63,812 nt of DNA from Malacoraja senta. Taxonomy: Eukaryota. Position numbers and translations under genes: made by a program. Below, one piece after another: positions 8,148 through 62,490 of the stretch (its first letter is position 1; the number at the start of each line of letters is the position of its first letter). The stretch is taken from contig CM075981.1 of assembly GCA_038087875.1 (NCBI GenBank), forward strand, positions 66,588,189 through 66,652,000, read 5' to 3'. The notes under the pieces were generated by a model. The model searched no databases, was not told the origin of the DNA, and saw only the letters and a list, made by a program, of their open reading frames with translations.

Positions 8148-8320
8148 GATAGACACAAAATGCTGGAGTAACTCGGGACAGGCAGCATCTCTGGAGAGGA
8201 GGAATAGGTGACATTTTGGGTCGAGATCCTTCTTCAGGTTGATCTGTCCCGCTGAGTTACTCCAGCATTTTGTGTCTATCTTCGGTTTAAACCAGCACCT
8301 GCAGTTCCTTCCTACACATT
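8148..8320. mobile_element. Short Penelope-derived fold-back element with 12-bp TSD
   Basis: Inverted arms GATAGACACAAAATGCTGGAGTAACTC / GAGTTACTCCAGCATTTTGTGTCTATC; flanked by CTCTAGATGGTA at 8136-8147 and 8321-8332. Confidence 0.85.
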
Positions 8321-8477: not shown

Positions 8478-9890
8478 CAGTAATGAAGGTTTCGTTTGTG
8501 CCAACTGATTGTTTGAGCAGCCCAGCAGAACACACGGCTGCTGATGAGACTTTACAATTGCTGTCTGCAGCCTTCCGGCGTGGCTGGCCGGACAAACAAC
8601 ACAACACCCCGCTCGCAATCCGCCCCTACTTCCTGGTTTGCGACGAACTAGTATTACAGGACGGAATTATAGTCAAGGGCCACAAGGCAGTGGACCCAGC
8701 AACCCTCCGGGACAAATACTTTGACGACATCCACAGGGGTCACCCCGGCGTGGAGGCAACCCTCCAAAGTGCGCAAAGCAAAGTTTTACTGGTCCAGAAT
8801 GACCATATACATACGAGAAAAAAAAGAAGTTTGCGCCGTCTGCAAAAGCCTGACGCCACATCAGCAAAAGCAGCCTTTACTGCTGCACCCAGTCCCTCCT
8901 CTCCCGTGGTCCACTTTAGCCACCGACATCTTCGAGTGGCATGGGACACACTATCTGGTTCTTGTTGACTCTTACTCGGGCTGGTTCGAAATTGATTTAC
9001 TTCAAACCACTACTTCTGAAGCAGTTATCGAGAAGTTGCAGTGTCACCTCTCCGTGCACGGCTCCCCTGCACGTATCCAGTCTGACAACGGAAGACAGTT
9101 CACCAGCCAAGCTTTTAAAGACTTTGCAAAACAATGGGACTTTCAACATATTAACAGCAGCCCTGAGTTCCCACAGTCCAACGGACTCGCCGATCGTGCT
9201 GTCCGGAGTGCAAAACAACTCATGGAGCAGTCATACCTTGCCAAATCAGACGTGTACCTAGACTTGCTCAACCTAAGGAATATTGCACGGGATCCCATAC
9301 TGGGTTCTCCAGCCCAATAACTGATGTCTCGTCAAACCCGTGCTCCTCTGCCTGTGTCCCAGCAGCTTTTACAGCCACAAGTAACATCTACAAGTAACAT
9401 CAGAAGCAACTACAATTCAAACGTGGCATGCAGAAACGCTTCTTCGACAAATCCAGCAAGCCACATAAACCTTTCGCACATGGACAAGTGGTCCATCTCC
9501 AGACAAACAAGGGCTATGCACGTCTGGGACACATCTACGGCCCCGCCAAAGAGCCGCGCTCTTATCTGATCGAAGCGGACGGAGTCATCTACAGCGGCAA
9601 CCGTCAACATGTCCTTCCAGTGAAGGAACCGCTTCCTGCGACTCCATATCCTGATGTCTCATGTTTTGTATACCCTCCCACGGTCGGTCCCGCGTCCCCA
9701 CTGCCACCTATCGTTTCCACCGCGGTCTAGCTTGCCTACCTCGTCACCCTCCCTGCCTGTCGAGTCGCCGGTCGTTTCCCCATTTCCCTCCCCGGTATCT
9801 TCTCCAGTGAAAGGAGGTGAGGCGGACTCGTACCGCACACGGGCCGGACGGGTTTGCAGGCCACCCGTTAGATATGGTGATTTTGTGTAA
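8478..9890 (+). pseudogene. Gypsy/Ty3 (K02A2.6-like) pol remnant: integrase, frameshifted
   Basis: HHCC finger (IHRGHPG..CAVC), core LATDIFEW..LVLVDSYSGWFE..IQSDNGRQF..PQSNGLADRAV (catalytic E reads D), C-terminal YRTRAGRVCRPPVRY; split over several frames with a stop at 9318-9320. Confidence 0.93.
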
Positions 9891-29795: not shown

Positions 29796-29958
29796 GGATA
29801 GACACGAAAAGCTGGAATAACTCAGCGGGTCAGAAGAAAGGTCTCGACCCGAATGGTCGCCTGTTCCTTTTCTCCAGAGATGCTGTCTGACCAGCTGAGT
29901 TGCTCCAACTTTTTGTGTCTATCTTCGGTTTAAACCAGCATCTGCAGTTCCTTCCTAC
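29796..29958. mobile_element. Short Penelope-derived fold-back element with 13-bp TSD
   Basis: ACCTTAATGTCAA at 29783-29795 and 29959-29971; inverted GATAGACAC..CTCAGC arms. Confidence 0.85.
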
Positions 29959-30359
29959 ACCTTAATGTCAATACGTTTCTGAATTTATTGAGTACAAAGT
30001 TATCTATTCCCATTTTTTGTATCAAAGCTTCTCAGCGTGTGATACCATATTGCAGACAATTTTGCCAAATTTCAGGCTACCATCGTGTTGTGAACGTATG
30101 ACTGTACTCTATACCTGTCCGATCCATGTACCTGACCAAATGTTTCTTCAAAGTTACGATAGTTACGAAATGCAAAAAAGGTTGCCGACCCCTGGACTAA
30201 ACCAAATCCTTGATCCTATCCTGCCAGCCTTTGTGTTCATTGATATTTCATTCACAATATTAGGATTTCGTAGAGGGAGAGAGAGAGAGATAGGTTGAAT
30301 GAATGAATGAAAGAAAGAAAAAGGTTGCTCAACAAATAATTAGAGATCACAAGAAAGAA

Positions 30360-35556: not shown

Positions 35557-36224
35557 ATAAATGGAATAAACTAAGAAGACCTGAGAGGTTTGTAATGCAA
35601 GGCCAGTTCCTGGTGCCACACAGAAGTCTTTGTACCCTGAGAACTTTCAGGGCTAGTCTAAATTGTGAGATCCCCTAGATCAGTGTATTGTGTCTCTAAA
35701 CCCTTGGTTAGTCTCGCTGGGTGTTGATGCATTGATGGATTCTCTAACTGTAGCTGGACAAAGATGGCAATGAGATGTAGCACCAGGAAGTGCGAGGTGA
35801 TTTAATTTATAAACTTAGCTTAGGGTGTTTTACTGCTTAAACGGCACAATATAAATCCAGGTTATTTTTGGGTACTAGCACTAATTGCACAAACGCAGTG
35901 ATCGTTGTTACATCTGATATTGAGTTGCACTGGAATATCAGACAGAGGTGCAACGAGTGGTCTATCCATGGGCACGAGTTTTACCTCCTGAAGATGTCCT
36001 CTGCTGTACCAGGAAAAATAAGTACATCCACACCTCATGAAAGTGAGGTATAATAGTGTGCAGCAAGATCAACAGTGGGCAGTGATTTCAGCCGGGACAA
36101 GAAGAGCACCAAATTCAGCGGTTTGATTAAAACTATGGTGAGAAGACTTGTGAGTAAGTGGTAGGTTGAGACAGGCATGAACTAATCTCACCAGTGCTTG
36201 GATTGTCTGAGCAGTGAATGGAAC

Positions 36225-36425
36225 AGTGTATGAAGGAACTGCAGATGCTGGTTTAAACCAAAGAAAAATGCTGGAGTAACTCAACAGGACAGGCAACATC
36301 TCGAGAGAGAAGGAATGGGTGACGTTTCGAGTCGACACCTTTCTTCAGGTCCAGAAACGTCACCCATTCCTTCTCTCCAGAGATGCTTGCTGTCTCGCTG
36401 AGTTACTCCAGCATTTTGTATCTAT
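36225..36425. mobile_element. Short Penelope-derived fold-back element with 13-bp TSD and hammerhead-like core
   Basis: CAGTGA(A/G)TGGAAC at 36212-36224 and 36426-36438; long inverted arms; minus strand 36321-36348 reads CTGAAGA-AAGGTGTCGACTC-GAAACGTC. Confidence 0.85.
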
Positions 36426-36499
36426 CAGTGAGTGGAACTGATGAAGTCTTGGAACCTGGCACAGCCGCTTCAAGACAGGCGGGACAGGAGTAGAGAAGG

Positions 36500-38500
36500 A
36501 TAAGAGGGAGAGGGTTGGTTTTGTGTGGAGTGGATAGGTGGGGATGTGTGCTGGTGGGTGCAAGGTGTGTGAGAGGGGTTAGGGCGAGTGCGTGGGGTGA
36601 AGGATGTTTGTGGGAGGGGCTTTGGGGTGGGAGGGAGTGGGAGGGATGGGGTGGGTATGATGGGAGATGGGGGTTGGGTGTGAATGCATGTTGGTGGGGG
36701 AGGGTGTGCGGAGTGTGTATTTATGTGTGGGGGAGCTGGGACGGGTGTGTATGTATGGAGAGGGCTTGAATGGGGGGGGGTGGACGAAGGAGGGGATGTG
36801 GGGTGGATGTGTGGGAAGAGTGGATGTAGGTGGGGAAGGGGATATGTGTGAGGGGGAGGGGATGTTGGCGTGGGGGTGGTGAGGAGGGAGGGAATGGGGA
36901 CAGGGGAGGCAGGGTTGGGGAATAGGGTTTGTGTGGGTGGTGGGGGAGGGACTGTGGTGTGGTGGTGTGAGATGGGGGTGGAGGAGGTAGGGATAGAGGG
37001 GATGTGTGGTGAGGTATTGGAATGGAGGGCGTGTGGGAGGTGGGGCAGGGGGTTGTATGATGGTGGGAGGTTGGGACGGAGGAGGGGGGGACAGAGATGG
37101 TGTGTGATGAGGTATGGGGAATGGTGTGTAGGTGGTGGGGAAGAGTGTGGGGATGGGTGATGGAGCAGCGGTGGTGTAAGCAAGGAATGGGTGAGGGTTG
37201 GGATGGAGATAGGAATGCTTGAGGGTTGAGGGAAGGGTTTGTGATGGGAGGGGAGAGTGTGGGGATGGGTGGGGGAGCAAGGGTGGGATATGTTTGGGGT
37301 TGAGATAATGTGTGGGAGAGATGGGATAGGGAGGGATAGAATGGAAAATGGAGGGAAGAATTAGGAAGAGCTGGTTGGGAGAGGACGGGGATCGATGTGG
37401 GAATGGGAGAGGAGTTGGATGCTGGCAGGGAAAGGTGAAGGTGGGTGGAGGGATTTATGTGTGTCCTTCAAGGGTGTGTGAGTGGGGAGGGAGCTGTTTT
37501 AATCGGGGATGGGGTTGCATGTGGGGTGGTGCGTGAACCGGTTGGGAGAGAGCAGTGTGGGTGGAGATCTGTGGGTCAGGGTGGGAGGCGTGTGGGTGGG
37601 GAGTGTGTGAGTGGGCCAGGGGTGGTGGAGAAAGCGGTGTGGGTGGGGAGCATATGGGGGTGGTTTAACTATGGTAAGTAAGGTAGTGTTGTTCAGGGGT
37701 GTGTGGTGGGAGGAAGCTTGTACATGGGGTGGGGAGTGTGTTTGAGGGTGGGGTTTGGGGACTGGTGGGGTGGGGACTTGGGGAAGATGTGGGGAGGGGA
37801 GTGTGATGGGTGGGGATTGAGTTGTGAGTGTTTGTAGGGTGGTGGGTTGGGTTTGCGTGGGTCTGAGTGGTGAGTAAGGTATTGGGTACGGCTGTGGGTT
37901 TGGAGGGTTGGGTGCATGTGTTAGTACGGAGGTTAGTAGGTGGGGTATGGGTGTGTGGGATGGGCGTGTGTGATGGGTGTGTATGGGATAGGTGGGGTAT
38001 GGGTGTGTGGGATGGGTGTGTGTGGGGTATGGGTGGGGTATGGGTGTGTGGGATGGGCGTGTGTGATGGGCATGTGTGGGGTAGGTGGGGTATGGGTGTG
38101 TGGGTAGACAAGAGTGCTGGAGAAACTCAGCGGGTGCAGCAGCATCTATGGTGCGAAGGAAATAGGCAACATTTTGGGCCGAAACCCTTCTGTGGGATGG
38201 GCGTGTGTGATGGGCGTGTGTGGGGTAGGTGGGGTATGGGTGGGGTATGGGTGTGTGGGATCGACTTGTGTGGGGTAGGTGGGGTATGGGATGGGTGTGT
38301 GTGGGGTAGGTGGGGTATGGGTGTGTGGGATCGGCGTGTGTGGGGTGGCGTGTTGGCAGGGGGTTGGGTATTGTGGGAGCGAGTGTAGTGTGAGGGTCTG
38401 ATCTGCGTGTGGGGTTGGAGTGGGCTGCGGGTGGGTGTACGGTTGTGGATGATGTGTACGTGTGCATGGATGAGTGTGAGGTTGTGCTGGGGTTGGGAAG
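36500..38500. repeat. 2-kb G/T-rich low-complexity tract with GGTGGGGTATGGGTGTGTGGGAT minisatellite
   Basis: Plus strand almost lacks C; repeated units at ~37935-38350, interrupted by a Penelope piece at ~38104-38190. Confidence 0.9.
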
Positions 38501-39300
38501 TGGGTAAAAGTTAAACCATCTCTGTTAAAGGATTTCAAATATTATCACTGATAATTCTTTATTTGTACGCATTAACACACATTAACAGTTAAAGTTAAAA
38601 CCCGATCATGCAGGAAGGATCGTTGCCACTGGAAAAAGAACGTGAACGCATTTCTCTGAAAGCCATTTTTATGAAAGATAGCTCATTCATCTTCTTTTGG
38701 AACCAACAACGTGATTTCTGCACTGAATTCCGATTGACAGTTGCTTCAGATTCATTGATAAATCTAATTGACAAAAATATATATTCCTCCTTCTCTTGTT
38801 TATTTCCTCTTTTATCTCCTAATCCTGTCACGCCTCTCCCTCTCCTTCCTCCCCCATTCTTGTTTCTTCTTTCCTTCACACTCCACAATTTACCCGTTCC
38901 TCTCATTCCTCCCTCTGCTCAGGGATGGCAGAGAGCTGCAGGAGGGGGTGATGCTGCCTCAGGTCCTGGGTTCAAACCTCACCTTGGGTTCCCTCCATAT
39001 GGAGTTTGCACATTCCCCCTGTAATCAAATGATTTTCCCCAGCTGCTCGGCTTTCCTCCCACATCCTGGCAGATTAATTGGCTGCAATAAACTACTGTAG
39101 GCATATGGCAGTGGTATCAGAAGGGATTGGTGAGTGTGAGGGAGTGGATCACACCGTGGGGGAGAGAATAATGGGAATGCTCTGAGAGATGCATGAATTC
39201 AATGGGTTGAATATCCTCTTCCAATGTGGCAAGGATTTTTTTCCCCTTCTTTTTGTCTACTCTCTCTCTCTCTCTCTCTCTTAGAATGTCAGTTATAATT

Positions 39301-39615
39301 AGGTGGCACAGTGGTGCAGCGGTGGAGTTGCTGCCATACAGCGCTTGCAGCACCGGAGACCCGTGTTCGATCCCGACTACGGGTGCTGTCTGTATGGAGT
39401 TTGTACGTTCTCCCCGTGACCATGTTTTCTCCGAGATCTTCACTTTCCTCCCACACCCAAAGACGTGCAGGTTTGTAGGTTAATTGGCTTGGAATAATTG
39501 TAGATTGTCCATAGTGTGTGTAGGATAGTGTTAATATGCAGGGATTGCTGGTCTGCACGGACTTGGTGGGCCGAAGGGCCTGTTTCCACGCTGTATCTCT
39601 AAATTAAACTAAACT
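39301..39615 (+). mobile_element. HE1-type SINE
   Basis: GGTGGCACAGTGGTGCAGCGG head, GTTCGATCC B box, CR1-type tail. Confidence 0.92.
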
Positions 39616-41264
39616 CCACAGTGGGAAGTGGGTGAGTTCTAAAGGAGGAGAAAATGTTCTTTATGAAACTTTGCTTGAATTGACAGAATCTGGTCCTGAA
39701 ATGCTTAATTTTTTGTGCAGGGGTGTCAGTCTTCGTTATCACAAGCTCACACAGAAAAAACAGTTCATCACACCAGTAGTTAATCTCAAGGATTTAAGCT
39801 CCAATGGACCTTCCAGCCAAGAGCAGGAGGAATCTTGTTATATTAATGGGAGATTTGTAATAACCATTACATCAATGTTTGACTGCACATGATACAGCGT
39901 GAAGCACAAAGTGCTGATTCAGTAACCATCCATCAACACTTCAGGGTGGAGAGTATCCACCAACACCAATATCCCTGGGATTAGAACTACTTCCGAATGA
40001 GTACAGAACCTCAGTTCACTCCTGTATTTTGCAAATACTGCATTATAAAGTATCACTGAACCTCTGCCAGGTTTCTGCCTGTCCTCCGAACACTACTTAC
40101 TCCCTCGCAGTTCCTACTGCAAGATATTGCCCTATACTAATTAAGTTGGCACATTTCCAAAGATGGAAAATTATTCCTCGAACAGGCCAGCCTATTAACC
40201 ACGCTCGGCAAAGGTCTTGACAGATATTGAATGTTAATCCGATCCTGCCTTGGTGCCTTTCCCTAACACATTGCTTCAGTTTCCATCCCCTTGCTCATTT
40301 TCCATCACTTGTATGGACAGCAATCTGTAGACTTTTTTTTTATGGTAACAGCAGCCTGATTTGCTTATTATTTTTAAATGAAGTATGGGAGCAACAATGT
40401 ACAAACATTAAAATCTGCTTTTTTCAAATCTCACCAAAACGCAGTAATTACTTGTCACTTACAAATTTCTGCAATTAATTGCATTGCTGCATGCAAGTCT
40501 CTGTTGGAATGTGAGATTTGTTGCGAGAACAGGATGAAATCTCAGTGGAGCAGGGCAATACAAAGTAGTAACTATACTCTCTCTGCCAGCTTTTATATTA
40601 ACACATTATAAAGTGGCCGATCGCACTGCTGCTACAGGGCTTCACTTTTAAAGCTCAGGTCGTTTTGCTCACCCCCTCTGCCCCTCGCATGCACCTTTCA
40701 CGCATGCCTCAGCAGCAAAAGTCAAAATCTATCCTAGCCATCCATCATGGCTTTTGCATGAATTAGGCAACTGTGTTTTGCACCATTCACTGCCCAGTGC
40801 TGTAATGCTGGGAGTAACAGAGAGCCCAACTAATTTAACAGCTGATACCTGAAGAAATAAGTTACAGCAATTTAGAGTCTGAGAAGTCTGAAGTTGGTGG
40901 TGCCAGAGACACACATGGTGCATTTGGCCCTTTAACTCAGCCTCTGTGCTAATCTCCACAGATGCTGCCCAACCTGAATTATCATCCATTTTCTGATTCA
41001 ACTTTGAACTCCAGCTACCGCAGTGTCTATTTTGCTACCACAGTTCACTCTGTGCTTCAAGAAAACAAACCATAGGAAATGTGACTACTCCAGGTATAGC
41101 AGTTTAAGGATTTCCTGGCCACAATACAGCTCTGTGCTGAGGTAATTGCACTGTTCAATTTACAAAATATCAGAAGATGATTTCAAATTCAGTTGGCAGG
41201 ACTTAATTCTGCAGCCAACTATTGTAATAGTCCTTCCCCTTCTGCCAAACAAGTGGTCCTGCTG

Positions 41265-42184: not shown

Positions 42185-42591
42185 AGTGTCTGGTGTATGT
42201 ATGGGATGGGAAACAGATGGGGGGAGGGGGATTATCTTCTGCCTTTTATTTGTTACACGTGGTGTGGCAGCTGTTAGTCTGAACTACATACTCATGCATC
42301 ATGAACAATGGCTGTTCAGCCCATTGCTGCCTTGCCTTTGATGATAATCTATTAATTAGCAAGATTCCTGCCATGCCTTATCGAAGCCCTTTGTCTCAAA
42401 ATGGCTGCACATGGCAGATTTAATGGGAGTTTGCAGGCCTTTGAATTATCTTGGTTCAATTATAAATACAGAACTTTATTTTGATTTATCTCACCTTTAA
42501 AAATAAACCCAGCTCCATGAGTCTGCAAAATGTCTCAATTATTTATATCACGGAACTGACTAATAATGACTGATAAAGTTGGTACAGACAT

Positions 42592-43176
42592 GGCATGTAA
42601 CCGAGTGCTGTTACATGTAACTGGGTGCTGCCACATGTAATCAGGTTCCATCATGTGTGACCAGGTGCATTCATATGTAATTGGGTACCACAACATGTAA
42701 TCAGGTGCTTTCACATGTAATGAGGCACCTCGCGTGTAATCAGGCATTGTTACGTGACTTGGCTCTGCCACATGTAATTGGGTGTTGTCACATGTAATCA
42801 AATCCTGTTATGCGTAATCATGCTCTGCTATATGTAAGCATGTGCTGTCACATGTAATCAGTCACTGGTTCATGTAATCATATGCCATCATATGTAAGTC
42901 AGATGCCATTGCATGTAATCAGGCACTGCCATGTGTAATAAGGCACTTTAACATGTAATCAGGCACTGTCATATGTAATCAATTGTGCCACATGTACTGT
43001 AATTGTGCCATCACATTTAATCAATTCCATCACATGTAATTGGGTGCCACCACATGTAATCAAACATCCTCACATATAATCAGACAATGTTAAATGATCT
43101 GGCGCAGTCACATGTAATCAACCACTTTTACATGTCATGTAACAGTGTCACATGTAATCAGGCATTGCCACATGTC
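42592..43176. repeat. 20-bp minisatellite, ~29 diverged units (consensus about CACATGTAATCAGGCACTGT)
   Basis: CATGTAAT recurs at a 20-bp period. Confidence 0.92.
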
Positions 43177-43229: not shown

Positions 43230-44552
43230 CTCAGACCTACAGTGGGGACTGCATTGGGGACTACCTCCTGCACCCATGCAGAACTCATGGAATTCATTAA
43301 CTTCACTACCAATTTGCATCCTGCTCTCAAATTCACTTGGACTATCTCCGACACATTCTTGATCTCACCGTCTCCATTACAGGAAATAGACTATCGACGG
43401 ACATCTATTATACACTTACTGACTCCCACAGCTCTCTAGACTACACTTCTTCCCACCCTACCTCCTGCAAAGACTCTATCCCCTACTTGCAATTTTCTGG
43501 CTCTGCCACATCTGCGCCCAAGATGAGGTGTTCCATACCAGAAAATCCGAGATGCCCTCATACTCTAGGGGATGGGGGGTTCCCCACTTTTATCATAGAT
43601 GAGACCCTCACACGTATCACTCAGTACCCCATAGATCCGCTCTTGTTCCCCCTCCTCCCAATCGCAACAGGGACAGAGTCCCCCTAGTCCGCACCTTTTA
43701 TCCCATCAGCCATCGCATACAGCACATAATACTTTGACAATTTTGCCCCCTCCAACGGGATCCCACCACGAACTGCTACTTCCCATCTCCACCCTTTCCA
43801 TTTTCCACAGAAACTGCACAACTCCCTGGTTCACTCATCCCTTCCCACCCAAACTACCCCCTCCCCAGGTACTTTTGCCTGCAACCGCAGGAGATGCAAC
43901 ACCTGTCTCTATACCTCCTCCCTCGACAGTCCTTTGAGGTGATGCAGAGGTTCACTTACACCTCCTCCAACCTCTTCTACTGTATTTGTTGTTCTCGGTA
44001 TGGACCCCTATATATCAGCGAGACCAAGCGCAGACTGGGCGATCATTTTGCTGTACATCTACACTCAGTCTGCCTTGACCTACGTGATCTCCCAGTTGCA
44101 AAACATTTTAATTCCCCATCTTATTCCTATATTGATCTTACTCTCCTGGACCTCTTCCACTGTCAGAGTGAGGCCAAGCGCAAATTGGAGGAACAGCAGC
44201 TCATATTTTGCTTGGGCAGCTTACAATCCGGTATGATTATTGATATCTCCAACTTCAAGTAACCCTTGCATTCCCTCTCACACCATCCCTACCCTAGTCG
44301 TCTTGCTAGTTTCACTGTTTGTATCCCTTTGTTATCACTGCGTCCACAGCCAACAATGGACCATTGTGGGCTCCACCTTTCCTGAGTCATCGGTGCCCCC
44401 TCTGAATTGTTCTGTGCCTCTTCATACCTCTAGTTTCCCTCTCCTTTGACTCTCAGTCTGAAGAAGGGTCGCGACCTGAAACCTCACCTTTTCCTTTTCT
44501 CCAGAGAGGCTGCCTGACCCGCTGCGTTACTTCAGCATTTAATGTCTACCTG
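43230..44552 (+). mobile_element. Penelope-like element, 5'-truncated: RT C-terminus + GIY-YIG endonuclease + terminal repeat
   Basis: FINFTTNLHPALKFTW, LDLTVSITGNRLSTDIY..DSHSSLDYTSSHP..CKDSIPY (RT thumb); YCICCSRYGPLYISETKRRLGDHF..VAKHFN..RKLEEQQLIFCLGSLQ (GIY-YIG); frameshifted. Confidence 0.93.
44458..44485 (+). ncRNA. Minimal type I hammerhead ribozyme-like motif (decayed) in the Penelope terminal repeat
   Basis: CTGAAGA-A-GGGTCGCGACCT-GAAA-CCTC: CUGANGA / stem II / GAAA / UH order. Confidence 0.65.
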
Positions 44553-45499
44553 CGTTGGTACATGTTACCAGGGACTAGTTTATGTTATCTGACACTCATA
44601 CATGACATCCTATGCTGGGCATACCTGATGTAGCACTGGAAGAAGAAATCCTACGCTGGTTTATGCAGTCAGCCACAGATTTCGAGAAGCAGAGTAATAT
44701 TAATATATAATATCATCAGTAATAAAAGTTGATAAAGTGATTCTATCTGCACCGTTCGGAAACCATATATTTTAAACAAAAGCCTATTTTTCTCTTTGGA
44801 AACGAATGAGTTTGCAGCATTCCCTCATTGAGAGTAGACAGCTCGAGCTGCACTTGCTTTCTTAATTGATTAAGTCCACGGTTGGCAGAATACAGTTTTT
44901 ATCAGTAAACATTAATAACTGTCAATTTCAGCTCCCACTCACAGATCGACAAAAAAAAAAATTCCATTGTTAATAATCTATTCTCATTAATAAAACAATC
45001 AGGGGATAAACCTTTCAAAATGGAGCAGGTGGTCTGTGAAGCTAATATTTGTATCTTTCAATTGTTTTGTACTTATAATGCAACTGCTTAATGAACACAA
45101 TGACTCAAAGCAGGAAAGATTCAGATTATTGATTTATGCCTATTTAATTCTTATATTTTGACAGGTGATCACATAATGTTTTTAATGGAACATTGTCATT
45201 GATAAATTGCCTGTTCACACTCTCCTAATTCTATACAATGCTGAAAAATCAAATCAATAAAACAATGAAACAAATGCCTGAAAATAAGCATTGATTTTTA
45301 TTTGTCAAAATTATTACAAAATAAAAATCAAATTCTGCCTGGCCTAATTATATCCTACCTGAAATATAGTGCACCAATGCTGTACGGCAAGTTGCATTTA
45401 ATCAGTGACAAATTGACCTTTTTAGATATATGATATCTCTAAGCTGAGATGTAAGAATGAAGCATTTCAATGAGTTGCCTCATTGATTCATTGGAAGAT

Positions 45500-45889: not shown

Positions 45890-46355
45890 GTAGATACAAG
45901 GAACTGCAGTTGCTGGTTTTTAAAAAAAAGCACAAAGTGCTTGAGTAACTCTGTGGGTCCGGCAGCATCTCTGAGAACATGGATAGGTCATGTTTCAGAT
46001 CGGGACCCTTCTTCAGACTGATAGTAGTGTCACTTGCCTGGCTTTGTTCAACCACCACCTCTCTTCCAGCTTCCTCCCCCCACTACAATCAGTCTGAAGA
46101 AGGGTCCTGACCCAAAATGGCACCTATCCATGTTGTCCAGAGATGCTGCCTGGCCCACTTTGTGCCTTTTCTTATAACAGTTTTGTTTTAAGAAAGTAGC
46201 AGACACATTATATAGTTCTGCCATGTGTAAAACCAACCAAACCAAGCAGTAATATTTGGATAGACACAAAATCCTGGAGTAACCCAACGGGTCAGGGCGC
46301 ATCTATGGAGAAAATGGATAGATGATGTTTCAGGTTTCACCCTCCTTCAGACAAT
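45890..46355. mobile_element. Penelope terminal-repeat fragments (inverted pair plus a further copy)
   Basis: CCCTTCTTCAGACTG at ~46007 and CAGTCTGAAGAAGGG at ~46090; a further TAGACACAAAATCCTGGAGTAAC copy from 46260. Confidence 0.8.
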
Positions 46356-55952: not shown

Positions 55953-56130
55953 AAACATAGAAACATAGAAAATAGGTGCAGGAGTAGGCCATTCGGCCCT
56001 TCGAGCCTGCACCGCCATTCAATATGATCATGGCTGATCATCCAACTCAGTATCCTGTACCTGCCTTCTCTCCATACCCCCTGATCCCTTTAGCCACAAG
56101 GGCCACATTTAACTCCCTCTTAAATATAGC
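55953..56130 (-). mobile_element. CR1 LINE 3' end (TTTCTATG tail), nested in an older plus-strand CR1 (~55850-56460)
   Basis: GAAACATAGAAACATAGAAAATAGGTGCAGGAGTAGGCCATTCGGCCC. Confidence 0.85.
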
Positions 56131-56729
56131 CTGGGGTTTTCCTGGATGAGGAGACAAGAACTAGAGTCCCAGAGACAAAATAAGTTGTTGATCATTTAGG
56201 GCTAAAATATGAAGACATTTCTTCATGCCGAGACCAGTGAATCTTCAAAATTCTCTCCCAGAGAGAGGTGTGGGGACTTGGCCATTAATTAAACTCAATA
56301 TAAAGATGGATAGATTTTTGGATATTAAAGGAATCAGGGGAAATGGGAACACAATGGGAAAATGATGTTTGAGGAAGACCATCTGCCATGATCTTATTAA
56401 AATGCACTGTGGGCTTGAGGAGCAAAATGATCCACTCCTGAACCTAGTTCTTACATTCTCAAGTTCGGTTCCCTGCTCCCTACCCCATTCTGCAAGGAAC
56501 TATTCCCCATCCTCCATTCAAAGACTCAGGGCCCTCTCCTATACTCTGCACCCACCCCTCCTGCAACTCAAAGACCTCTCCAATCCTCCCCACCACTCCC
56601 TGAAGTTCCTCAGATCTTGAGGTTCCCAGTGGCTCCCTAATTCTCTACCTCTGCCACACTCCATCCCGAGGTCTACAACGGAAACTCTGATCTGCACCAT
56701 ACCTGACCACTTAACTTATTGCTGAACTT

Positions 56730-57605
56730 CATGGAGTCATATAGCTCAAAAACAGGACCTTCCCATCAGGTCCATCAAGCATCCATCTACACTATTTATC
56801 ACCACGTGGTCCATAACCTTTATACCTTGGCAATTTATGTGCTTTTCTTGGTACTTCGTAAATGTTGTGTGCAACTGCCTCCATCCCTCATTCTGGCAAT
56901 ACGATTCAGATTCCAGCCACACTCTTAGTTCAAAATTGTTCAACCTCAGTCCCGTCTAAACCTTTTACCCATTACCCAATGCCCTTGCCCTCTGCTTTAA
57001 GATGCCTCTGCAATGGGCAAGTGCCGGGCTTGCACCTTGCCTATAATTTTGTATACCTCAACCAAGTCATCCCTCAGCCTCCTCCGCTCCAAGGCAACAA
57101 ACCAGACCTCTCCAGCTTCTCCTCGTAATTGAAACATTCTATCCCAGGCAACAGCTTGGTGCATCCTCTGTGCACCCTCTCCAGTGCAAGCATGTCCTTC
57201 CTGTAGTATGGTGACTAAGCATATAATATTCCAGCTGTGGTCTCACCAATGCTTTATAAAGTTGAACCATAACCTACCTTCTCTGATATTCTAGGCCATG
57301 GAGGACAACGATTCCATATGCCTTCCTAAACACCTTATTTATCCGTGCTGCTACTTTCGTGGATCCTAATACACCAACGACCTTCTGTTCCTCAATACTC
57401 CCCAGACTATTATTATTTATTGTCCGTCCTGCTTTTATTAGCGCATAATGCCACATGGTTAAATTCCATCTGTCACTGCTAGTCCACCTTAACAATTGAG
57501 AAATATTATCCTGTAAGCCATGACTACCCTCCTCACGTCACCAGCACCACCAATTTTTATGTCATCAGTGAATTTACTCATCTTACCTCCTACATTCTAC
57601 ATCTG
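56730..57605 (-). mobile_element. Degenerate CR1 LINE 3' portion
   Basis: GAGTCATA tail; collinear decayed ORF2 (LGSIEEQKVVGV..KVFRKAYG). Confidence 0.75.
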
Positions 57606-58254
57606 AAGCTAATCAGTCAAGAAAATCCCTTGCAGCTCCAACCACCACCATTGCCTCAAGCAGTCTGTCGCATCCCACCTCCACTCAAGCTCTGAACACA
57701 TCTTTGAGAACCATATTCAATTGAGTTTGCAGGCAGCTGAAATTGTAACTCAAGTGATTGTTGATGGCTCATTGCATTCGCACAGTAGGTGGGTGCATAA
57801 GCAGCGTTTTTAATAGTTTTGATGACCAGAGAGATACTGCAACTGGTCCAGTCCAGTAAGATGTCCAAAGACACTTCGCTGGAGGAAATTCAGGCACAAC
57901 GCTGACATCACCTTTGTTATGTGTCTTTAAGTACGGACATGTGTCCATTCATTGCGTGGTCCAATTGGGATGGAAGGTCATGCAATGTGTCAATTTATAG
58001 ATGTTAAAGAATGAATGTCAGAGATTTGGGAGCTGGAAAAGCTTCTTTATGCAGGACACTGAGAAGGTATGGAATTTACAGCAATGATTAGTGGTTGCAG
58101 CAGTAATGAAGATCGGAGAGGTGCTGAGATGGGGGAAAAAAGGACACAGGTTAATAACAGGATAGATTGTTAATTGAGATGGAGAGTAAACTCTGCATGA
58201 CCTGGTTGGGCTGACTGGCCCGATTCTGTGAAGCAATGTCCATAACTAAAAAGG

Positions 58255-58832
58255 TGTAGATGGTTTATGCATGCAACCAATCACATAGCTACCTCACCAC
58301 TACTAACCCCGCCTTAAGTATCATTTATAATAACGCCTGCTTCTCCTTCTGCGCAGTACAGTAGCAGACTGGAGTCAGAGACTACTCGTGTATTGTTTAA
58401 CTCTGTATACTTATTAAAGACTATTATAATGTCACACGTGTGTAATGACTATTTACATGGTGTCAGACAGTGACTACTCGCGTCTCCTGTTTATCGTTTT
58501 TTATTTCTTTTGCTAAGTTTTTAATTTCATTTTGACAATGGCTTCCTCTTGCCGAAAGCCTGCTCAGCTCGTCTTCAATTCGGACATCGCGGAGCGCTGG
58601 GCTACTTTCGAACTGGACTACCGCTTCTGACACCATGTAAATAGTCATTACACACGTGTGACATTATAATAGTCTTTAATAAGTATACAGAGTTAAACAA
58701 TACATGAGTAGTCACTGACTCCAGTCTGCTACTGTACTGCGCAGAAGGAGAAGTTATTATAAATGATACTTAAGGCAGGGTTAGTAGTGGTGAGGTAGCT
58801 ATGTGATTGGTTGCATGCATAAACCATCTACA
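58255..58832. mobile_element. Gypsy-derived element with two inverted LTRs (58255-58457; 58636-58832), two inverted PBSs and a gag 5' stub
   Basis: TGTA..TACA LTR, PBS TGGTGTCAGA (58458-58467), gag start MASSCRKPAQLVFNSDIAERWATFELDYRF* (58538-58630), CTTCTGACACCA (58624-58635), inverted LTR; TSD AAAGG at 58250-58254 and 58833-58837. Confidence 0.92.
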
Positions 58833-60037
58833 AAAGGCAATTAGGAAGAATTCCTGGCCTCTGATTAGAGCACGGATTTAACAAGAACAACTTTAAGGTT
58901 ACACCAGCAGAATTTAAACCCCACCCACTCTGCAGTTTCTCTGCTAACATCGTTTGAAGTTGGGAACCTGAAACACAATTACACTGCCCACACATAATGA
59001 ATGGACAGGATGGTACCACAGACTTGTTTAATTAGGTCTGACTGGAGGAGAGCTAAACTAGAGTTTAGAGAAAGGACGTTTTGCAGGGTTGTGACATCGA
59101 CAGTCAAAGTGAAAAGGATCTCACATACAGAATGGACAAAGAACAGTGCTTTTGTGTTTATATACCACCCTGCACAATCTCGATACCCTACAGCTTCCAA
59201 TATGCAAACCATGCATAGAAGCCAACTACATGACTTGGAACAACTTGAATGTCTGGAAAGATCATGGCCTTTTCTCCTTTGCAATTACCTCTCCTCTACC
59301 ACAAGTGGACTGGAACCTAAAATCTGTTCTCCGTACACTCCATAATGGTGGAGCAGATGTCAGCACCTGTTAACTATTTGGCCTCGTGTATGATGCGTTT
59401 CCCACCTTTTGTTTAGCTCATGCCCAGCAGCACCTTAGAGAGAGGGGAGGTGCTTTTTTCCCCCGGAATTGTGCTCTGCTTTGAGATGATAGATGGCGCC
59501 TTGTTTTGAGGCCTTGCGTGTACATCTGGTACTCTTTTTCATATGTAAATCTCACATGAAAGCCACTTCACATATTGGTAGTTAACTAGTCACTTCCGTA
59601 TACAGTTCACTCTAGTGCAGTTAATGTTATTCTGGCATCAGCTGCACTCTTGATGACGGACGGTACCAATGCAGAGGCCCCTCATCTCGACCTAACCAAG
59701 AAATTGTAGAGTGACCCATGTCCTTTGCTTTTAACTCAAGATAAGGCAACGTACAAGCCCGGCAGTAGATCAGCAAGTGTATGTGCCCGAGAGGGTCTCT
59801 ACAACAATGATGTGCGGTTGTTTCCGTCTGCCTGTTTGAGTTTTCAGTGCTCTGTTTCACTGCAGAGGTTCAGTGCGATACGAGAGGGACATTTGTCTGC
59901 ATGGTGAATGGGCTCGCCTCTCACCAGGGTGGGCCCATATGTCGCACTGGTAAGTGAGGGGCAGGAGGTGGTCACACAAACTGAAACCACGTCCTCCCCT
60001 TCCCTGAATCTTTGCTCACTTTTAGGCTCGCCTTTTA

Positions 60038-60178
60038 ATAGAGTCATAGAATTGTACAGCACCGAATTAGACCCCCTTCGGTCCACCCAATACACGCCGA
60101 CTGTATTGCATGTCTGTGCTAATCCCATTTGTCTGCATTAGGTCCATGTTTCTCTATTCCTTTCCTGTCCAGGTATAT
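60038..60178 (-). mobile_element. CR1 LINE 3' end fragment
   Basis: ATAGAGTCATAGA tail and CCCTTCGGTCCAC. Confidence 0.75.
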
Positions 60179-60569
60179 GGGCTCCCCGAGTTACAGAAGA
60201 CTGGGTTTATGGTAATCCGACTTTACGCATACTTTTTTCAAGACAGCAAATTCATTTACTGAAATGCAAACCTCTTCAGGAGTTTAGGTAGCACCTAGTT
60301 AATTCAGGACAAACCGTCTTTAAAAAAAAAAAAAAAACTATTTAGATGTAACTTTCCTGCAGTAATCAAACAGATTATCTTTAAAAACATAGCTGCCGTT
60401 TCTCAGTGGGAGGCCACAAGAGGAATTCTTTGGAAACTGAAAAGACAAATCTCTTTTATTGACACGAAAAATATTTTATCGAGCAACATAATATCCATTA
60501 ATACTATAAGGCCGTCAAAGCATTAGATGTTGGACATTATGATCCCGTACCATTGTAACTATACAGGAA

Positions 60570-61050
60570 GTCATAGTCAGAGTCATACAACCTGGAAACA
60601 GGCTCGGCCCAACCCATCCATGCCAACCAATATGCCCCATCTTAACTAGTCCCATTTGCCCGCATTTGACCAATATCCCTCTAAACATTTCCTATCCTAT
60701 AGCTACCCAAGTGACTTTTAAATGATGTTATAGTACCCGCCTCAACTACCTTCTCTGACAACTCGCTCCATAAACCCATCACCCTCTGAGTGAAAATATT
60801 GCCCCTCAAATTCGTATTACATCTTGCCCCTCTCATCTTAAGCATATGTCTTCTTATTTTTGAGTCCCCTACCCTCAGTAAAAGACTGCATTCACCCTAT
60901 CAATTCCCCTCATGATTTTACAGTTATAACATCACCCCTCAGCCTCCTGTGCTCCAAGGAATAAAATCATAGCCTGCCCAACCATTCTCGATAGCTCAGC
61001 CCCTCAAGTCCTGGCAACATTCTCATAAATCTTCTCTGCACTATTTCCAT
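60570..61050 (-). mobile_element. CR1 LINE 3' portion
   Basis: Collinear with 108-590. Confidence 0.88.
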
Positions 61051-62093: not shown

Positions 62094-62490
62094 TGTAGGA
62101 AGGGACTGCAGATGCTGGTTTAAACCAAAGATAGACACAAAAAGCTGGAGTAACTCAGCGGGACAGGCATCATCTCTGGAGAGAACGAATGGGTGACATT
62201 TCGGGTCGAGACCCTTCTTCAGACTGGTTAGGGATAAGGGAAACAAGAGATATAGATGGTGATGTAGAGAGATAAAGAAAAATAAATAAAGGAAATGCAA
62301 AACAGTAACGATGATAAAAGAACCAGGCCATTGTTAGCTGTTTGTAGGGTGAAAACGAGAAGCTGAGAACTCAGTAGGTCAGGCAGCATCTCTGGACAGT
62401 CAACATTTTGGGTCTGAATTTTTCATCTGGAGTCTTCCCTCCACAGATGTTGCCTGACTGCTATGTTCCCCCAGCAGTTTGTTTTTTGCT
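62094..62490 (-). mobile_element. Penelope 3' terminal fragment with hammerhead-like core, adjoining an older Penelope fold-back piece
   Basis: Minus strand 62195-62222 reads CTGAAGA-A-GGGT-CTCG-ACCC-GAAATGTC. Confidence 0.82.

What the first reader, a model, noticed from the sequence alone, without database searches (positions are those of the whole stretch)
58250..58837. Integrated LTR element with INVERTED LTRs: a 578-bp fold-back Gypsy derivative with a clean 5-bp TSD
Seen: AAAGG | LTR (203 bp, TGTA..TACA) | PBS TGGTGTCAGA | leader | ~30 codons of gag | inverted PBS CTTCTGACACCA | inverted LTR (197 bp) | AAAGG. By my count the arms differ by 3 substitutions and one 6-bp indel. Established: LTR retrotransposons have direct LTRs; integrase joins TG..CA ends and makes 4-6-bp TSDs; TGGTGTCAGAAG is complementary to the 3' end of tRNA-Leu(CAA). 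Inference: the direct TSD on both outer U3 ends means integrase inserted this palindromic molecule as one unit, rather than it arising by later rearrangement. It looks like a MITE but is built from retrotransposon parts. With an LTR promoter and PBS facing inward from each side, it could be a one-off cDNA or a member of an undescribed non-autonomous inverted-LTR family. Any read-through transcript would fold into ~200 bp of dsRNA against its own family.
Basis: partly seen in the sequence, partly recalled or inferred. Interest (0 to 1): 0.85.

Follow-up and report, generated by a model that had tools for sequence, protein, structure and literature searches.

The report
Fold-back Gypsy LTR insertion, dead on arrival
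A 578-bp piece of a skate Gypsy-type retrotransposon was inserted with its two long terminal repeats facing each other, most likely a reverse-transcription accident that the element's integrase still pasted into the chromosome; it is a clean fossil of a rare error, not a new kind of mobile element.

Summary
Two LTR copies (203 and 197 bp, TGTA..TACA) lie inverted at 58255-58457 and 58636-58832. They differ by 3 substitutions and one 6-bp indel. Each is followed inward by TGGTGTCAGA, which is complementary to the tRNA-Leu(CAA) 3' end, and AAAGG flanks both sides.

Evidence that it was inserted:
- A related species (about 3.9% flank divergence) has a contig that joins 58248 directly to 58832. 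That is an empty site with one AAAGG.
- Contigs from two samples of the window's own species join both flanks to U3 ends.

The LTR, leader and gag belong to a high-copy family. In that family the U5 end also meets host DNA. A relative in Leucoraja erinacea has direct LTRs, a PPT, a 5-bp TSD and gag-RT-RH-IN, so the clade is Ty3/Gypsy.

The inner junction lies in CCGC (58621-58624). Family gag runs on past it. T58625 matches the tRNA, not the left-arm PBS.

My reading is a one-off aberrant cDNA, made when plus-strand strong-stop DNA was misused, then integrated through two U3 ends. No sign of an amplified fold-back family was found. The inner junction itself has no read-level confirmation.

The scan noted similar inverted-LTR or tRNA-Leu fusion fossils elsewhere in this genome. 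Those notes are unchecked.

The parts
58250..58254 (.). Left copy of the 5-bp target-site duplication, AAAGG
   Evidence: The empty site in the relative has a single copy (joint 58248->58832, 6 ambiguous letters).
58255..58457 (+). Left LTR, 203 bp, TGTAG...TTTACA, oriented U3-R-U5 inward
   Evidence: It is homologous in layout to the direct LTRs of the L008 Gypsy element. X20 and X21 contigs run from the left flank into its first 27 nt (records 8 and 16).
58458..58467 (+). Primer-binding site TGGTGTCAGA, 10 nt complementary to the tRNA-Leu(CAA) 3' end. Position 11 is C, the genomic type.
   Evidence: The same LTR-end/PBS motif is conserved in related elements L001, L005, L007, L008 and L009.
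58468..58537 (+). Untranslated leader
   Evidence: Aligns with the leader of the transcript contig L001. Family contigs cover it.
58538..58624 (+). First 29 codons of gag (MASSCRKP...FELDYR)
   Evidence: phmmer hits P0001-P0006 are gag N-termini. In X20, X21, X1, X3 and X6 the family contigs continue past 58624 with CACTACATG....
58621..58625 (.). Fold-back junction. CCGC is the gag end and matches 3 of 4 positions of the tRNA-type PBS complement (CCAC). T58625 is an orphan that matches the tRNA but neither gag nor the genomic PBS.
58626..58635 (-). Inverted PBS, TGGTGTCAGA on the minus strand. With T58625 and C58624 it reads TGGTGTCAGAAG, the tRNA type.
58636..58832 (-). Right LTR, 197 bp, inverted. 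It carries a 6-bp deletion relative to the left arm and to L008.
   Evidence: X20 and X21 contigs run from its last 27 nt into the right flank (records 15 and 23).
58833..58837 (.). Right copy of the target-site duplication, AAAGG

Best explanation
This is a single, non-mobile, dead-on-arrival insertion of an aberrant cDNA from a high-copy, tRNA-Leu-primed Ty3/Gypsy family of skates.

Proposed pathway (inferred):
1. A plus-strand strong-stop DNA (U3-R-U5 plus a partial copy of the tRNA primer's 3' end) was joined in the wrong polarity to plus-sense gag sequence, 87 nt into the ORF. The join was a template switch or mis-priming at the 4-nt near-match CCGC/CCAC.
2. Synthesis ran back through leader, PBS, U5 and R, and ended by run-off at a U3 5' terminus.
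3. After second-strand synthesis the product was a linear palindromic duplex with a U3 end at both tips.
4. The element's integrase used those two TG..CA ends for an ordinary concerted integration, which made the 5-bp AAAGG duplication.

Shown: the structure, the insertion, the TSD, the family identity of every part, and the junction position.
Inferred: the order of reverse-transcription steps, and that one molecule rather than two was integrated.

Without a PPT, a 3' R or pol it cannot copy itself. Its only plausible activity is as a hairpin or convergent-promoter locus.
For: - Empty orthologous site with one AAAGG in a relative. X1 record 2 is a 457-nt contig that skips 583 nt.
- Both flanks are joined to U3 starts in contigs from two samples of the same species (records 8, 15, 16, 23). 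Both outer ends are therefore U3 ends whatever lies inside.
- In the family, the U3 start and the U5 end each meet variable host sequence. Loose ends at 58254 and 58457 have agreement of about 0.5. The U5 end also continues into PBS and leader. The family is therefore an ordinary direct-LTR family.
- The relative L008 has direct LTRs, a PPT, a 5-bp TSD (4 of 5 letters preserved) and gag-RVT_1-RT_RNaseH_2-Integrase_H2C2-rve. L009 also has direct LTRs (98% identical), a PPT, and RT_RNaseH then Integrase_H2C2 after gag.
- The junction is not at an LTR tip, so integrase did not make it. It sits inside the 18-nt tRNA-templated part of a strong-stop DNA. Position 11 is A as in tRNA-Leu(CAA), against C in the left arm and in family contigs.
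- Arm differences are private to one arm or the other. The 6-bp deletion is in the right arm relative to L008, and 58379 and 58388 are private to the left arm relative to family contigs. This fits arms that were identical at insertion.
- Arm divergence (1.5%) is below flank divergence to the species with the empty site (3.9%).
- No junction-bridging contig in X20, X21, X3 or X6.
- Ty1 integrase inserts unrelated linear DNA with TG..CA tips and makes 5-bp TSDs (PMC2939329).
Against: - The inner junction (58624/58625) rests on the assembly alone. No Logan contig bridges it, and the k-mer index could not test it. Logan contigs are expected to drop single-copy paths between high-copy repeats, so this is no refutation.
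- The tRNA-type signature is a single nucleotide. Some family copies themselves carry CTTCTGACACCA (X20 record 3, X21 record 10), so a variant parent could explain it.
- The tRNA sequence used is human, not skate.
- Microhomology of 1 exact nucleotide (3 of 4 imperfect) fits host end-joining as well as template switching.
- Absence of a family was judged from contigs and about 160 kb of relatives' DNA, not from a whole-genome search.
Confidence: 0.6

Rival explanations
1. Two-donor integration. Two separate incomplete cDNA fragments each had a free U3 end: one was LTR-PBS-leader-gag broken at nt 87 of the ORF, the other was LTR plus 11-12 nt of PBS. One intasome captured both and inserted them in concert into the same target, and host end-joining then ligated the two inner ends.
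For: It gives the same final structure, including the TSD. A junction with 1 nt of exact microhomology is typical of NHEJ/MMEJ. Concerted integration of two separate one-ended donors is standard in in-vitro integrase assays (my knowledge, not tested here).
Against: It needs two independent breaks plus chromosomal break repair without loss of any LTR sequence. It does not explain why one break lies inside the tRNA-templated PBS with the tRNA-type base. It also needs a free duplex U3 end on both fragments, which itself requires completed second-strand transfer on both.
Confidence: 0.2
2. It is a member of a non-autonomous, MITE-like family with inverted LTRs that is mobilised as DNA or by an unknown route.
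For: It has a compact size, perfect TG..CA tips and a TSD. The outer 35-40 nt of U3 are conserved even in a more distant species (X22) and in L008, so they could be an integrase recognition site.
Against: No contig bridges the junction in the same species or in two relatives, while hundreds of contigs from normal family copies end exactly at 58624 or start at 58626-58627. The element has no PPT and no 3' R, so canonical retrotransposition is impossible. Retroviral-type integrases do not excise. There is no copy in the window or in L004, L008 or L009.
Confidence: 0.07
3. It arose by post-integration rearrangement of a normal element or of two neighbouring insertions, or it is an assembly fold-back artefact.
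For: The inner junction lacks independent read support.
Against: The right boundary is the exact U3 tip next to the duplicated AAAGG, and the relative's empty site is exact to the base. A normal element would end there with its U5 tip. Both flank-to-U3 junctions occur in independent contig sets from two samples. The assembly junction is a novel join at near-microhomology, not a collapse inside a shared repeat.
Confidence: 0.05
4. It is a DNA transposon with long terminal inverted repeats (for example Ginger-like, TGTNR tips), or a DIRS-type element with inverted repeats.
For: It has TGTAG tips, arms of about 200 bp, and inverted terminal repeats.
Against: The arms are LTRs of a family whose U5 end also abuts host DNA and whose relatives have direct LTRs, PBS, PPT and gag-pol. 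Each arm is followed by a tRNA-Leu PBS. DIRS elements have non-identical inverted repeats, an internal complementary region and a tyrosine recombinase (PMC7192593). Here there is a 5-bp TSD and no internal complementary region.
Confidence: 0.02

Closest known systems
Canonical Ty3/Gypsy LTR retrotransposon insertion (for example the related element at L008:9437-15322 in Leucoraja erinacea)
   Same: It has the same kind of LTR (TGTAGAT... start, ...ATTTACA end, about 200 bp), the same tRNA-Leu PBS, the same gag N-terminus, and a 5-bp TSD made by a DDE integrase.
   Different: The second LTR is inverted and is a second 5' LTR-plus-PBS unit. There is no PPT, no pol and no 3' R. Both chromosomal junctions use U3 tips instead of one U3 and one U5.
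[quoted passage not shown]
   Same: An aberrant reverse-transcription product is integrated as one unit and is recognisable by a single TSD around the whole complex.
   Different: Those are large three-LTR tandem complexes in direct orientation. This one is a 578-bp inverted fold-back.
Autointegration products: deletion and inversion circles of Ty1, retroviruses and Arabidopsis SISYPHUS (PMC7197481)
   Same: They are dead-end by-products of LTR-element replication in which LTRs can end up inverted relative to internal sequence.
   Different: Autointegration joins LTR tips to internal sites and yields circles that are not inserted into the chromosome. Here the inner junction is not at an LTR tip, and the product is chromosomal with a host TSD.
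TRIM / SMART non-autonomous LTR elements
   Same: It has a sub-kilobase size, short LTRs, a PBS and no coding capacity.
   Different: TRIMs have direct LTRs and a PPT and are amplified families. This one has inverted LTRs and no PPT, and appears unique.
DIRS-order retrotransposons
   Same: It is a retroelement with inverted terminal repeats.
   Different: DIRS elements use a tyrosine recombinase, carry an internal complementary region, and have non-identical repeats (PMC7192593). By general knowledge they make no TSD. Here a TSD, a PBS and a DDE-integrase family context are present.

Membership tests
Ty3/Gypsy (Metaviridae) LTR retrotransposon, as a derivative | pol domain order PR-RT-RH-IN with Gypsy-type RT/RNase H and an H2C2 integrase | tested here: inconclusive
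   The element has no pol. A related element with homologous LTR ends, the same PBS and a related gag N-terminus (62% identical to P0001, the closest database gag to the window's) has RVT_1, RT_RNaseH_2, Integrase_H2C2 and rve in that order (L008). L009 has the same order. No full-length copy of this exact family was available.
Ty3/Gypsy (Metaviridae) LTR retrotransposon, as a derivative | LTRs with TG..CA tips, a tRNA-complementary PBS next to the 5' LTR, and a 4-6-bp TSD | tested here: met
Ty3/Gypsy (Metaviridae) LTR retrotransposon, as a derivative | Direct orientation of the two LTRs, and a PPT before the 3' LTR | tested here: not met
   The LTRs are inverted, and the inner side of the right LTR is a PBS, not a purine tract. 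This makes it an aberrant derivative, not a functional member.
TRIM / non-autonomous LTR retrotransposon family | Direct LTRs, PBS plus PPT, and multiple dispersed copies | tested here: not met
   Inverted LTRs and no PPT. No second copy of the junction in contigs of four runs or in the loci held. A whole-genome search was not possible.
MITE / TIR DNA transposon (including Ginger) | TIRs that are transposase substrates, not derived from LTRs; a family of copies; a TSD length typical of the superfamily | tested here: not met
   The arms are LTRs of a retrotransposon family whose U5 ends abut host DNA elsewhere. Relatives have direct LTRs.
DIRS order | Inverted non-identical terminal repeats, an internal complementary region and a tyrosine recombinase (PMC7192593); no TSD (general knowledge) | tested here: not met
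   A 5-bp TSD is verified by the empty site. The arms are 98% identical. The interior is PBS-leader-gag, with no repeat of the LTR tips.

The most novel reading that the evidence does not exclude
The insertion may be one example of a recurrent pathway in skate genomes. In that pathway, plus-strand strong-stop DNAs of tRNA-Leu-primed Gypsy elements often mis-prime on plus-sense templates. The resulting palindromic cDNAs are integrated through two U3 ends. The hairpin or convergent-promoter loci left behind then feed small-RNA silencing of the parent family. Unchecked notes from this scan describe several similar fossils in the same genome: s1-175031, s1-170640, s1-187591, s1-140358.
Probability: 0.15. 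Interest if true: 0.7.

Novelty: new variant of a known kind. Interest (0 to 1): 0.45.

Why it matters
The locus is a natural, sequence-resolved record of two things usually seen only in vitro or in virus-like-particle DNA. One is a wrong-polarity use of plus-strand strong-stop DNA. The other is a concerted integration that used two U3 ends.

The orthologous empty site makes the case unusually clean. If such fossils are common in this genome, as unchecked notes suggest, they could be counted to measure the error spectrum of reverse transcription in vivo. They would also give ready-made hairpin loci against the parent family.

On its own the insertion is a single dead element with no demonstrated function.

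Tried and rejected
- **Read-level confirmation of the inner junction.** Laying four runs on 58565-58685 showed contigs ending at 58624 or starting at 58624-58627. None bridged the junction. A 60-nt junction-only query had too few indexed words. An 84-nt query found only the same species, holding 4 of 6 words. Neither confirms nor refutes.
- **RNA families and tRNAs.** No Rfam match in 56000-61000 and no tRNA gene in the window.
- **Other copies in the window.** There are none.
- **Pfam on gag homologues.** No hits. Classification had to come from neighbouring pol in L008 and L009.
- **L004 (Amblyraja radiata, 117 kb).** It has only a diverged, truncated relative: gag, then an aspartyl protease below the Pfam cut-off, then an unrelated zf-RVT ORF.
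- **Literature.** Full-text searches for integrated inverted-LTR elements with a TSD found only DIRS, yeast rearrangement and vector papers. I found no description of this structure, but subscription journals are not covered.
- **Autointegration.** Rejected because the inner junction is not at an LTR tip.
- **Hairpin half-site integration.** Rejected because it would not make a TSD.

Full report
**1. What is there**

The window is vertebrate DNA. Its SINE families recur in the Amblyraja radiata locus L004, so it comes from a skate.

At 58255-58832 there is a 578-bp inverted-repeat unit:
- The left LTR is 58255-58457 (203 bp, TGTAG...TTTACA).
- The right LTR is 58636-58832 (197 bp), and is its reverse complement.
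- Each LTR is followed inward by TGGTGTCAGA.
- Between the two PBS copies lie a 70-nt leader, an ATG at 58538 and 29 gag codons.
- AAAGG stands directly outside both LTR tips.
- As RNA the unit folds into a near-perfect hairpin (-398 kcal/mol, z = -40).

**2. It is a real insertion with a real target duplication**

I laid Logan contigs of four runs on 57600-59500.
- Two runs from two samples of the window's own species (X20, X21) have single-copy contigs. These run from the left flank 27 nt into the left LTR, and from the last 27 nt of the right LTR into the right flank.
- Both chromosomal junctions are therefore flank-to-U3-start, whatever the interior is.
- Run X1 comes from a related species. 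Its flanks differ from the window at 42 of 1084 aligned letters, or 3.9%.
- X1 has a 457-nt contig that joins 58248 to 58832 and skips 583 nt, with six letters fitting either side. This is the empty site with one copy of AAAGG.
- A later rearrangement of a normal element cannot explain this, because a normal element would meet the right flank with its U5 tip.
- X20 and X21 may include the sample the assembly was built from, so they are not fully independent of it. The X1 empty site is independent.

**3. Every part belongs to an ordinary, high-copy direct-LTR family of the Ty3/Gypsy clade**

Family behaviour in the contigs:
- Over the element the summed contig depth is in the thousands, against about 25 in the flanks of X20. 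This is not a copy number, but the family is clearly repeated many times.
- Loose ends before 58254 and behind 58457 are heterogeneous (agreement about 0.5). In other copies, then, both the U3 start and the U5 end abut different host sequences.
- Other contigs run from U5 into PBS and leader.

The gag fragment:
- The 30-aa ORF was searched against 1.84 billion proteins. It found six gag N-termini, the best 86% identical over 28 aa.
- Their loci show the conserved motif ...ATTTACA | TGGTGTCAG(A) ahead of a diverged leader.

The related elements:
- L008 (Leucoraja erinacea) has direct LTRs with the same TGTAGAT... start and ...ATTTACA end, a purine tract before the 3' LTR, and a 5-bp TSD of which 4 of 5 letters are preserved.
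- Its ORFs hit RVT_1, RT_RNaseH_2, Integrase_H2C2 and rve in that order.
- L009 has 98%-identical direct LTRs, the PBS TGGTGTCAGAAG, and RT_RNaseH followed by Integrase_H2C2.
- 'Gypsy derivative' is therefore supported through relatives. I had no pol from this exact family.

The PBS was compared with the human tRNA-Leu-CAA-2-1 sequence printed in PMC10359600, which ends ...CCCACTTCTGACACCA. The skate tRNA itself was not available.

**4. The inner junction**

A second lay on 58565-58685 gave the following.
- In five runs from the window's species and two relatives (X20, X21, X1, X3, X6), family gag contigs match the window through C58624 and then continue CACTACATG... (agreement 0.92-1.0). This agrees with the HY(M/I).IAHRN seen in the protein hits.
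- Family contigs in the inverted sense match from T58626. They are preceded by ...GTCACTG, the complement of the left-arm leader.
- The join therefore lies at 58624/58625, not at an LTR tip, so integrase did not make it.
- T58625 fits neither gag (C) nor the genomic-type PBS complement (G). It does fit the tRNA.
- Read on the minus strand, the right arm carries TGGTGTCAGAAG-CGG. The tRNA complement is TGGTGTCAGAAG-TGG, and the left arm is TGGTGTCAGA-CAG.
- The gag end CCGC thus matches the tRNA-type PBS complement CCAC in 3 of 4 places. The mismatch would be a G-T wobble.

Caveat: some family copies themselves carry CTTCTGACACCA (X20 record 3, X21 record 10). The tRNA-type base could therefore come from a variant parent.

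**5. Most likely mechanism (inference)**

The right arm has exactly the content of a plus-strand strong-stop DNA: U3-R-U5 plus a partial copy of the tRNA primer. The rest is what is obtained by copying plus-sense gag-leader-PBS-U5-R backwards and finishing on a U3 5' end.

I propose these steps:
1. A strong-stop DNA 3' end and a gag sequence were joined in the wrong polarity at the CCGC/CCAC near-match. This happened by mis-priming or template jumping.
2. Synthesis ran to the 5' end of the template and, through R homology, to the U3 end of a plus-strand DNA.
3. A second strand was made, giving a linear palindromic duplex with two U3 tips.
4. Integrase accepted these tips. Ty1 integrase needs little more than TG..CA tips to insert foreign DNA with 5-bp TSDs (PMC2939329).

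The sequence does not exclude the main rival, in which two separate U3-ended fragments are integrated together and the inner ends are joined by host repair. I rate it lower. It needs more independent events, and it does not explain a break inside the tRNA-templated PBS.

**6. Age and fate**

- Against the L008 LTR, the 6-bp gap is a deletion in the right arm.
- 58379 and 58388 are private to the left arm when compared with family contigs.
- The 58319 difference is a CpG-to-TpG change in the right arm.
- Private changes on both arms fit arms that were identical at insertion.
- Arm divergence of 1.5% against 3.9% flank divergence places the insertion after the split from the species with the empty site. 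That agrees with the empty site.
- With no PPT, no 3' R and no pol, the unit cannot retrotranspose.

**7. One-off or family**

- No contig bridging 58624/58625 was listed for the same species or for two relatives.
- There are no further copies in the window or in about 160 kb of relatives' DNA.
- Logan contigs drop rare paths, so this argues only against an amplified family. It does not show that the junction is absent from the reads.
- The junction itself therefore rests on the assembly.
- This scan's earlier notes are unchecked AI readings that I could not test. They list further inverted-LTR-with-TSD and tRNA-Leu-fusion fossils in the same genome. They are leads for a recurrent pathway, not support.

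**8. Comparison with known systems and novelty**

- It works like a normal Gypsy integration but with two U3 ends. It is not a functional member, because orientation and PPT fail.
- It is not a TRIM, MITE, Ginger or DIRS element (see the membership table; DIRS features from PMC7192593).
- The nearest described phenomenon is integration of template-switch 'complex' elements with a single TSD (PMC1950507). Those are direct and large.
- Autointegration inversion circles (PMC7197481) are not chromosomal and join at LTR tips.
- Full-text searches found no description of an integrated inverted-LTR fold-back with a TSD. The library does not cover much of the older retrovirology literature.

I rate it a new variant of a known kind. 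It is a well-documented curiosity of moderate interest, and it would matter more if a census shows it to be recurrent.

Noticed in passing
window 8483-9320 (+): Two overlapping ORFs hit Integrase_H2C2 (weak, E 0.0018) and rve (E 8.6e-12). They look like a decayed integrase of another LTR element, unrelated to the fold-back's LTR.
   Followed up: partly
window 36700-38400: A strongly G-rich, GT/GGG-rich minisatellite-like block. GC skew is 0.48 over 36001-40000, and there are many overlapping 11-28-nt periodic repeats.
   Followed up: no
window 42580-43175: A tandem array with a 20-nt period built on the CATGTAATCAGG motif, about 25-30 units at 60-70% identity.
   Followed up: no
window 36265-36430, 62094-62229, 8154-8316, 29829-29959, 44454-44554, 46087-46351: A dispersed repeat of about 85-130 nt (AAAATGCTGGAGTAACTCAGCGGG...) occurs in both orientations, once as a tight inverted pair (36265-36328 / 36354-36417). 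The same repeat occurs in the Amblyraja radiata locus L004.
   Followed up: no
L004 (Amblyraja radiata GCA_010909765.2, CM021370.1), gene at 10001-107225: The protein annotated as tyrosine-protein kinase Fyn (P0005) ends in 70 residues that are the N-terminus of a Gypsy gag at L004:106998-107222. This is either a gene-model artefact or an exonised transposon fragment.
   Followed up: partly
window 58255-58296 and 58791-58832: The outermost 40 nt or so of U3 are the only part of the element found in the more distant organism F (X22), where they meet many different flanks. The L008 LTR starts similarly. This may be a conserved integrase recognition end.
   Followed up: partly
window 58373-58391 vs 58465-58483: A 19-nt segment inside the LTR (AGTCAGAGACTACTCGTGT) is repeated at 84% identity immediately after the PBS. 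Its significance is unknown; it could pair with U5/R in the genomic RNA.
   Followed up: no
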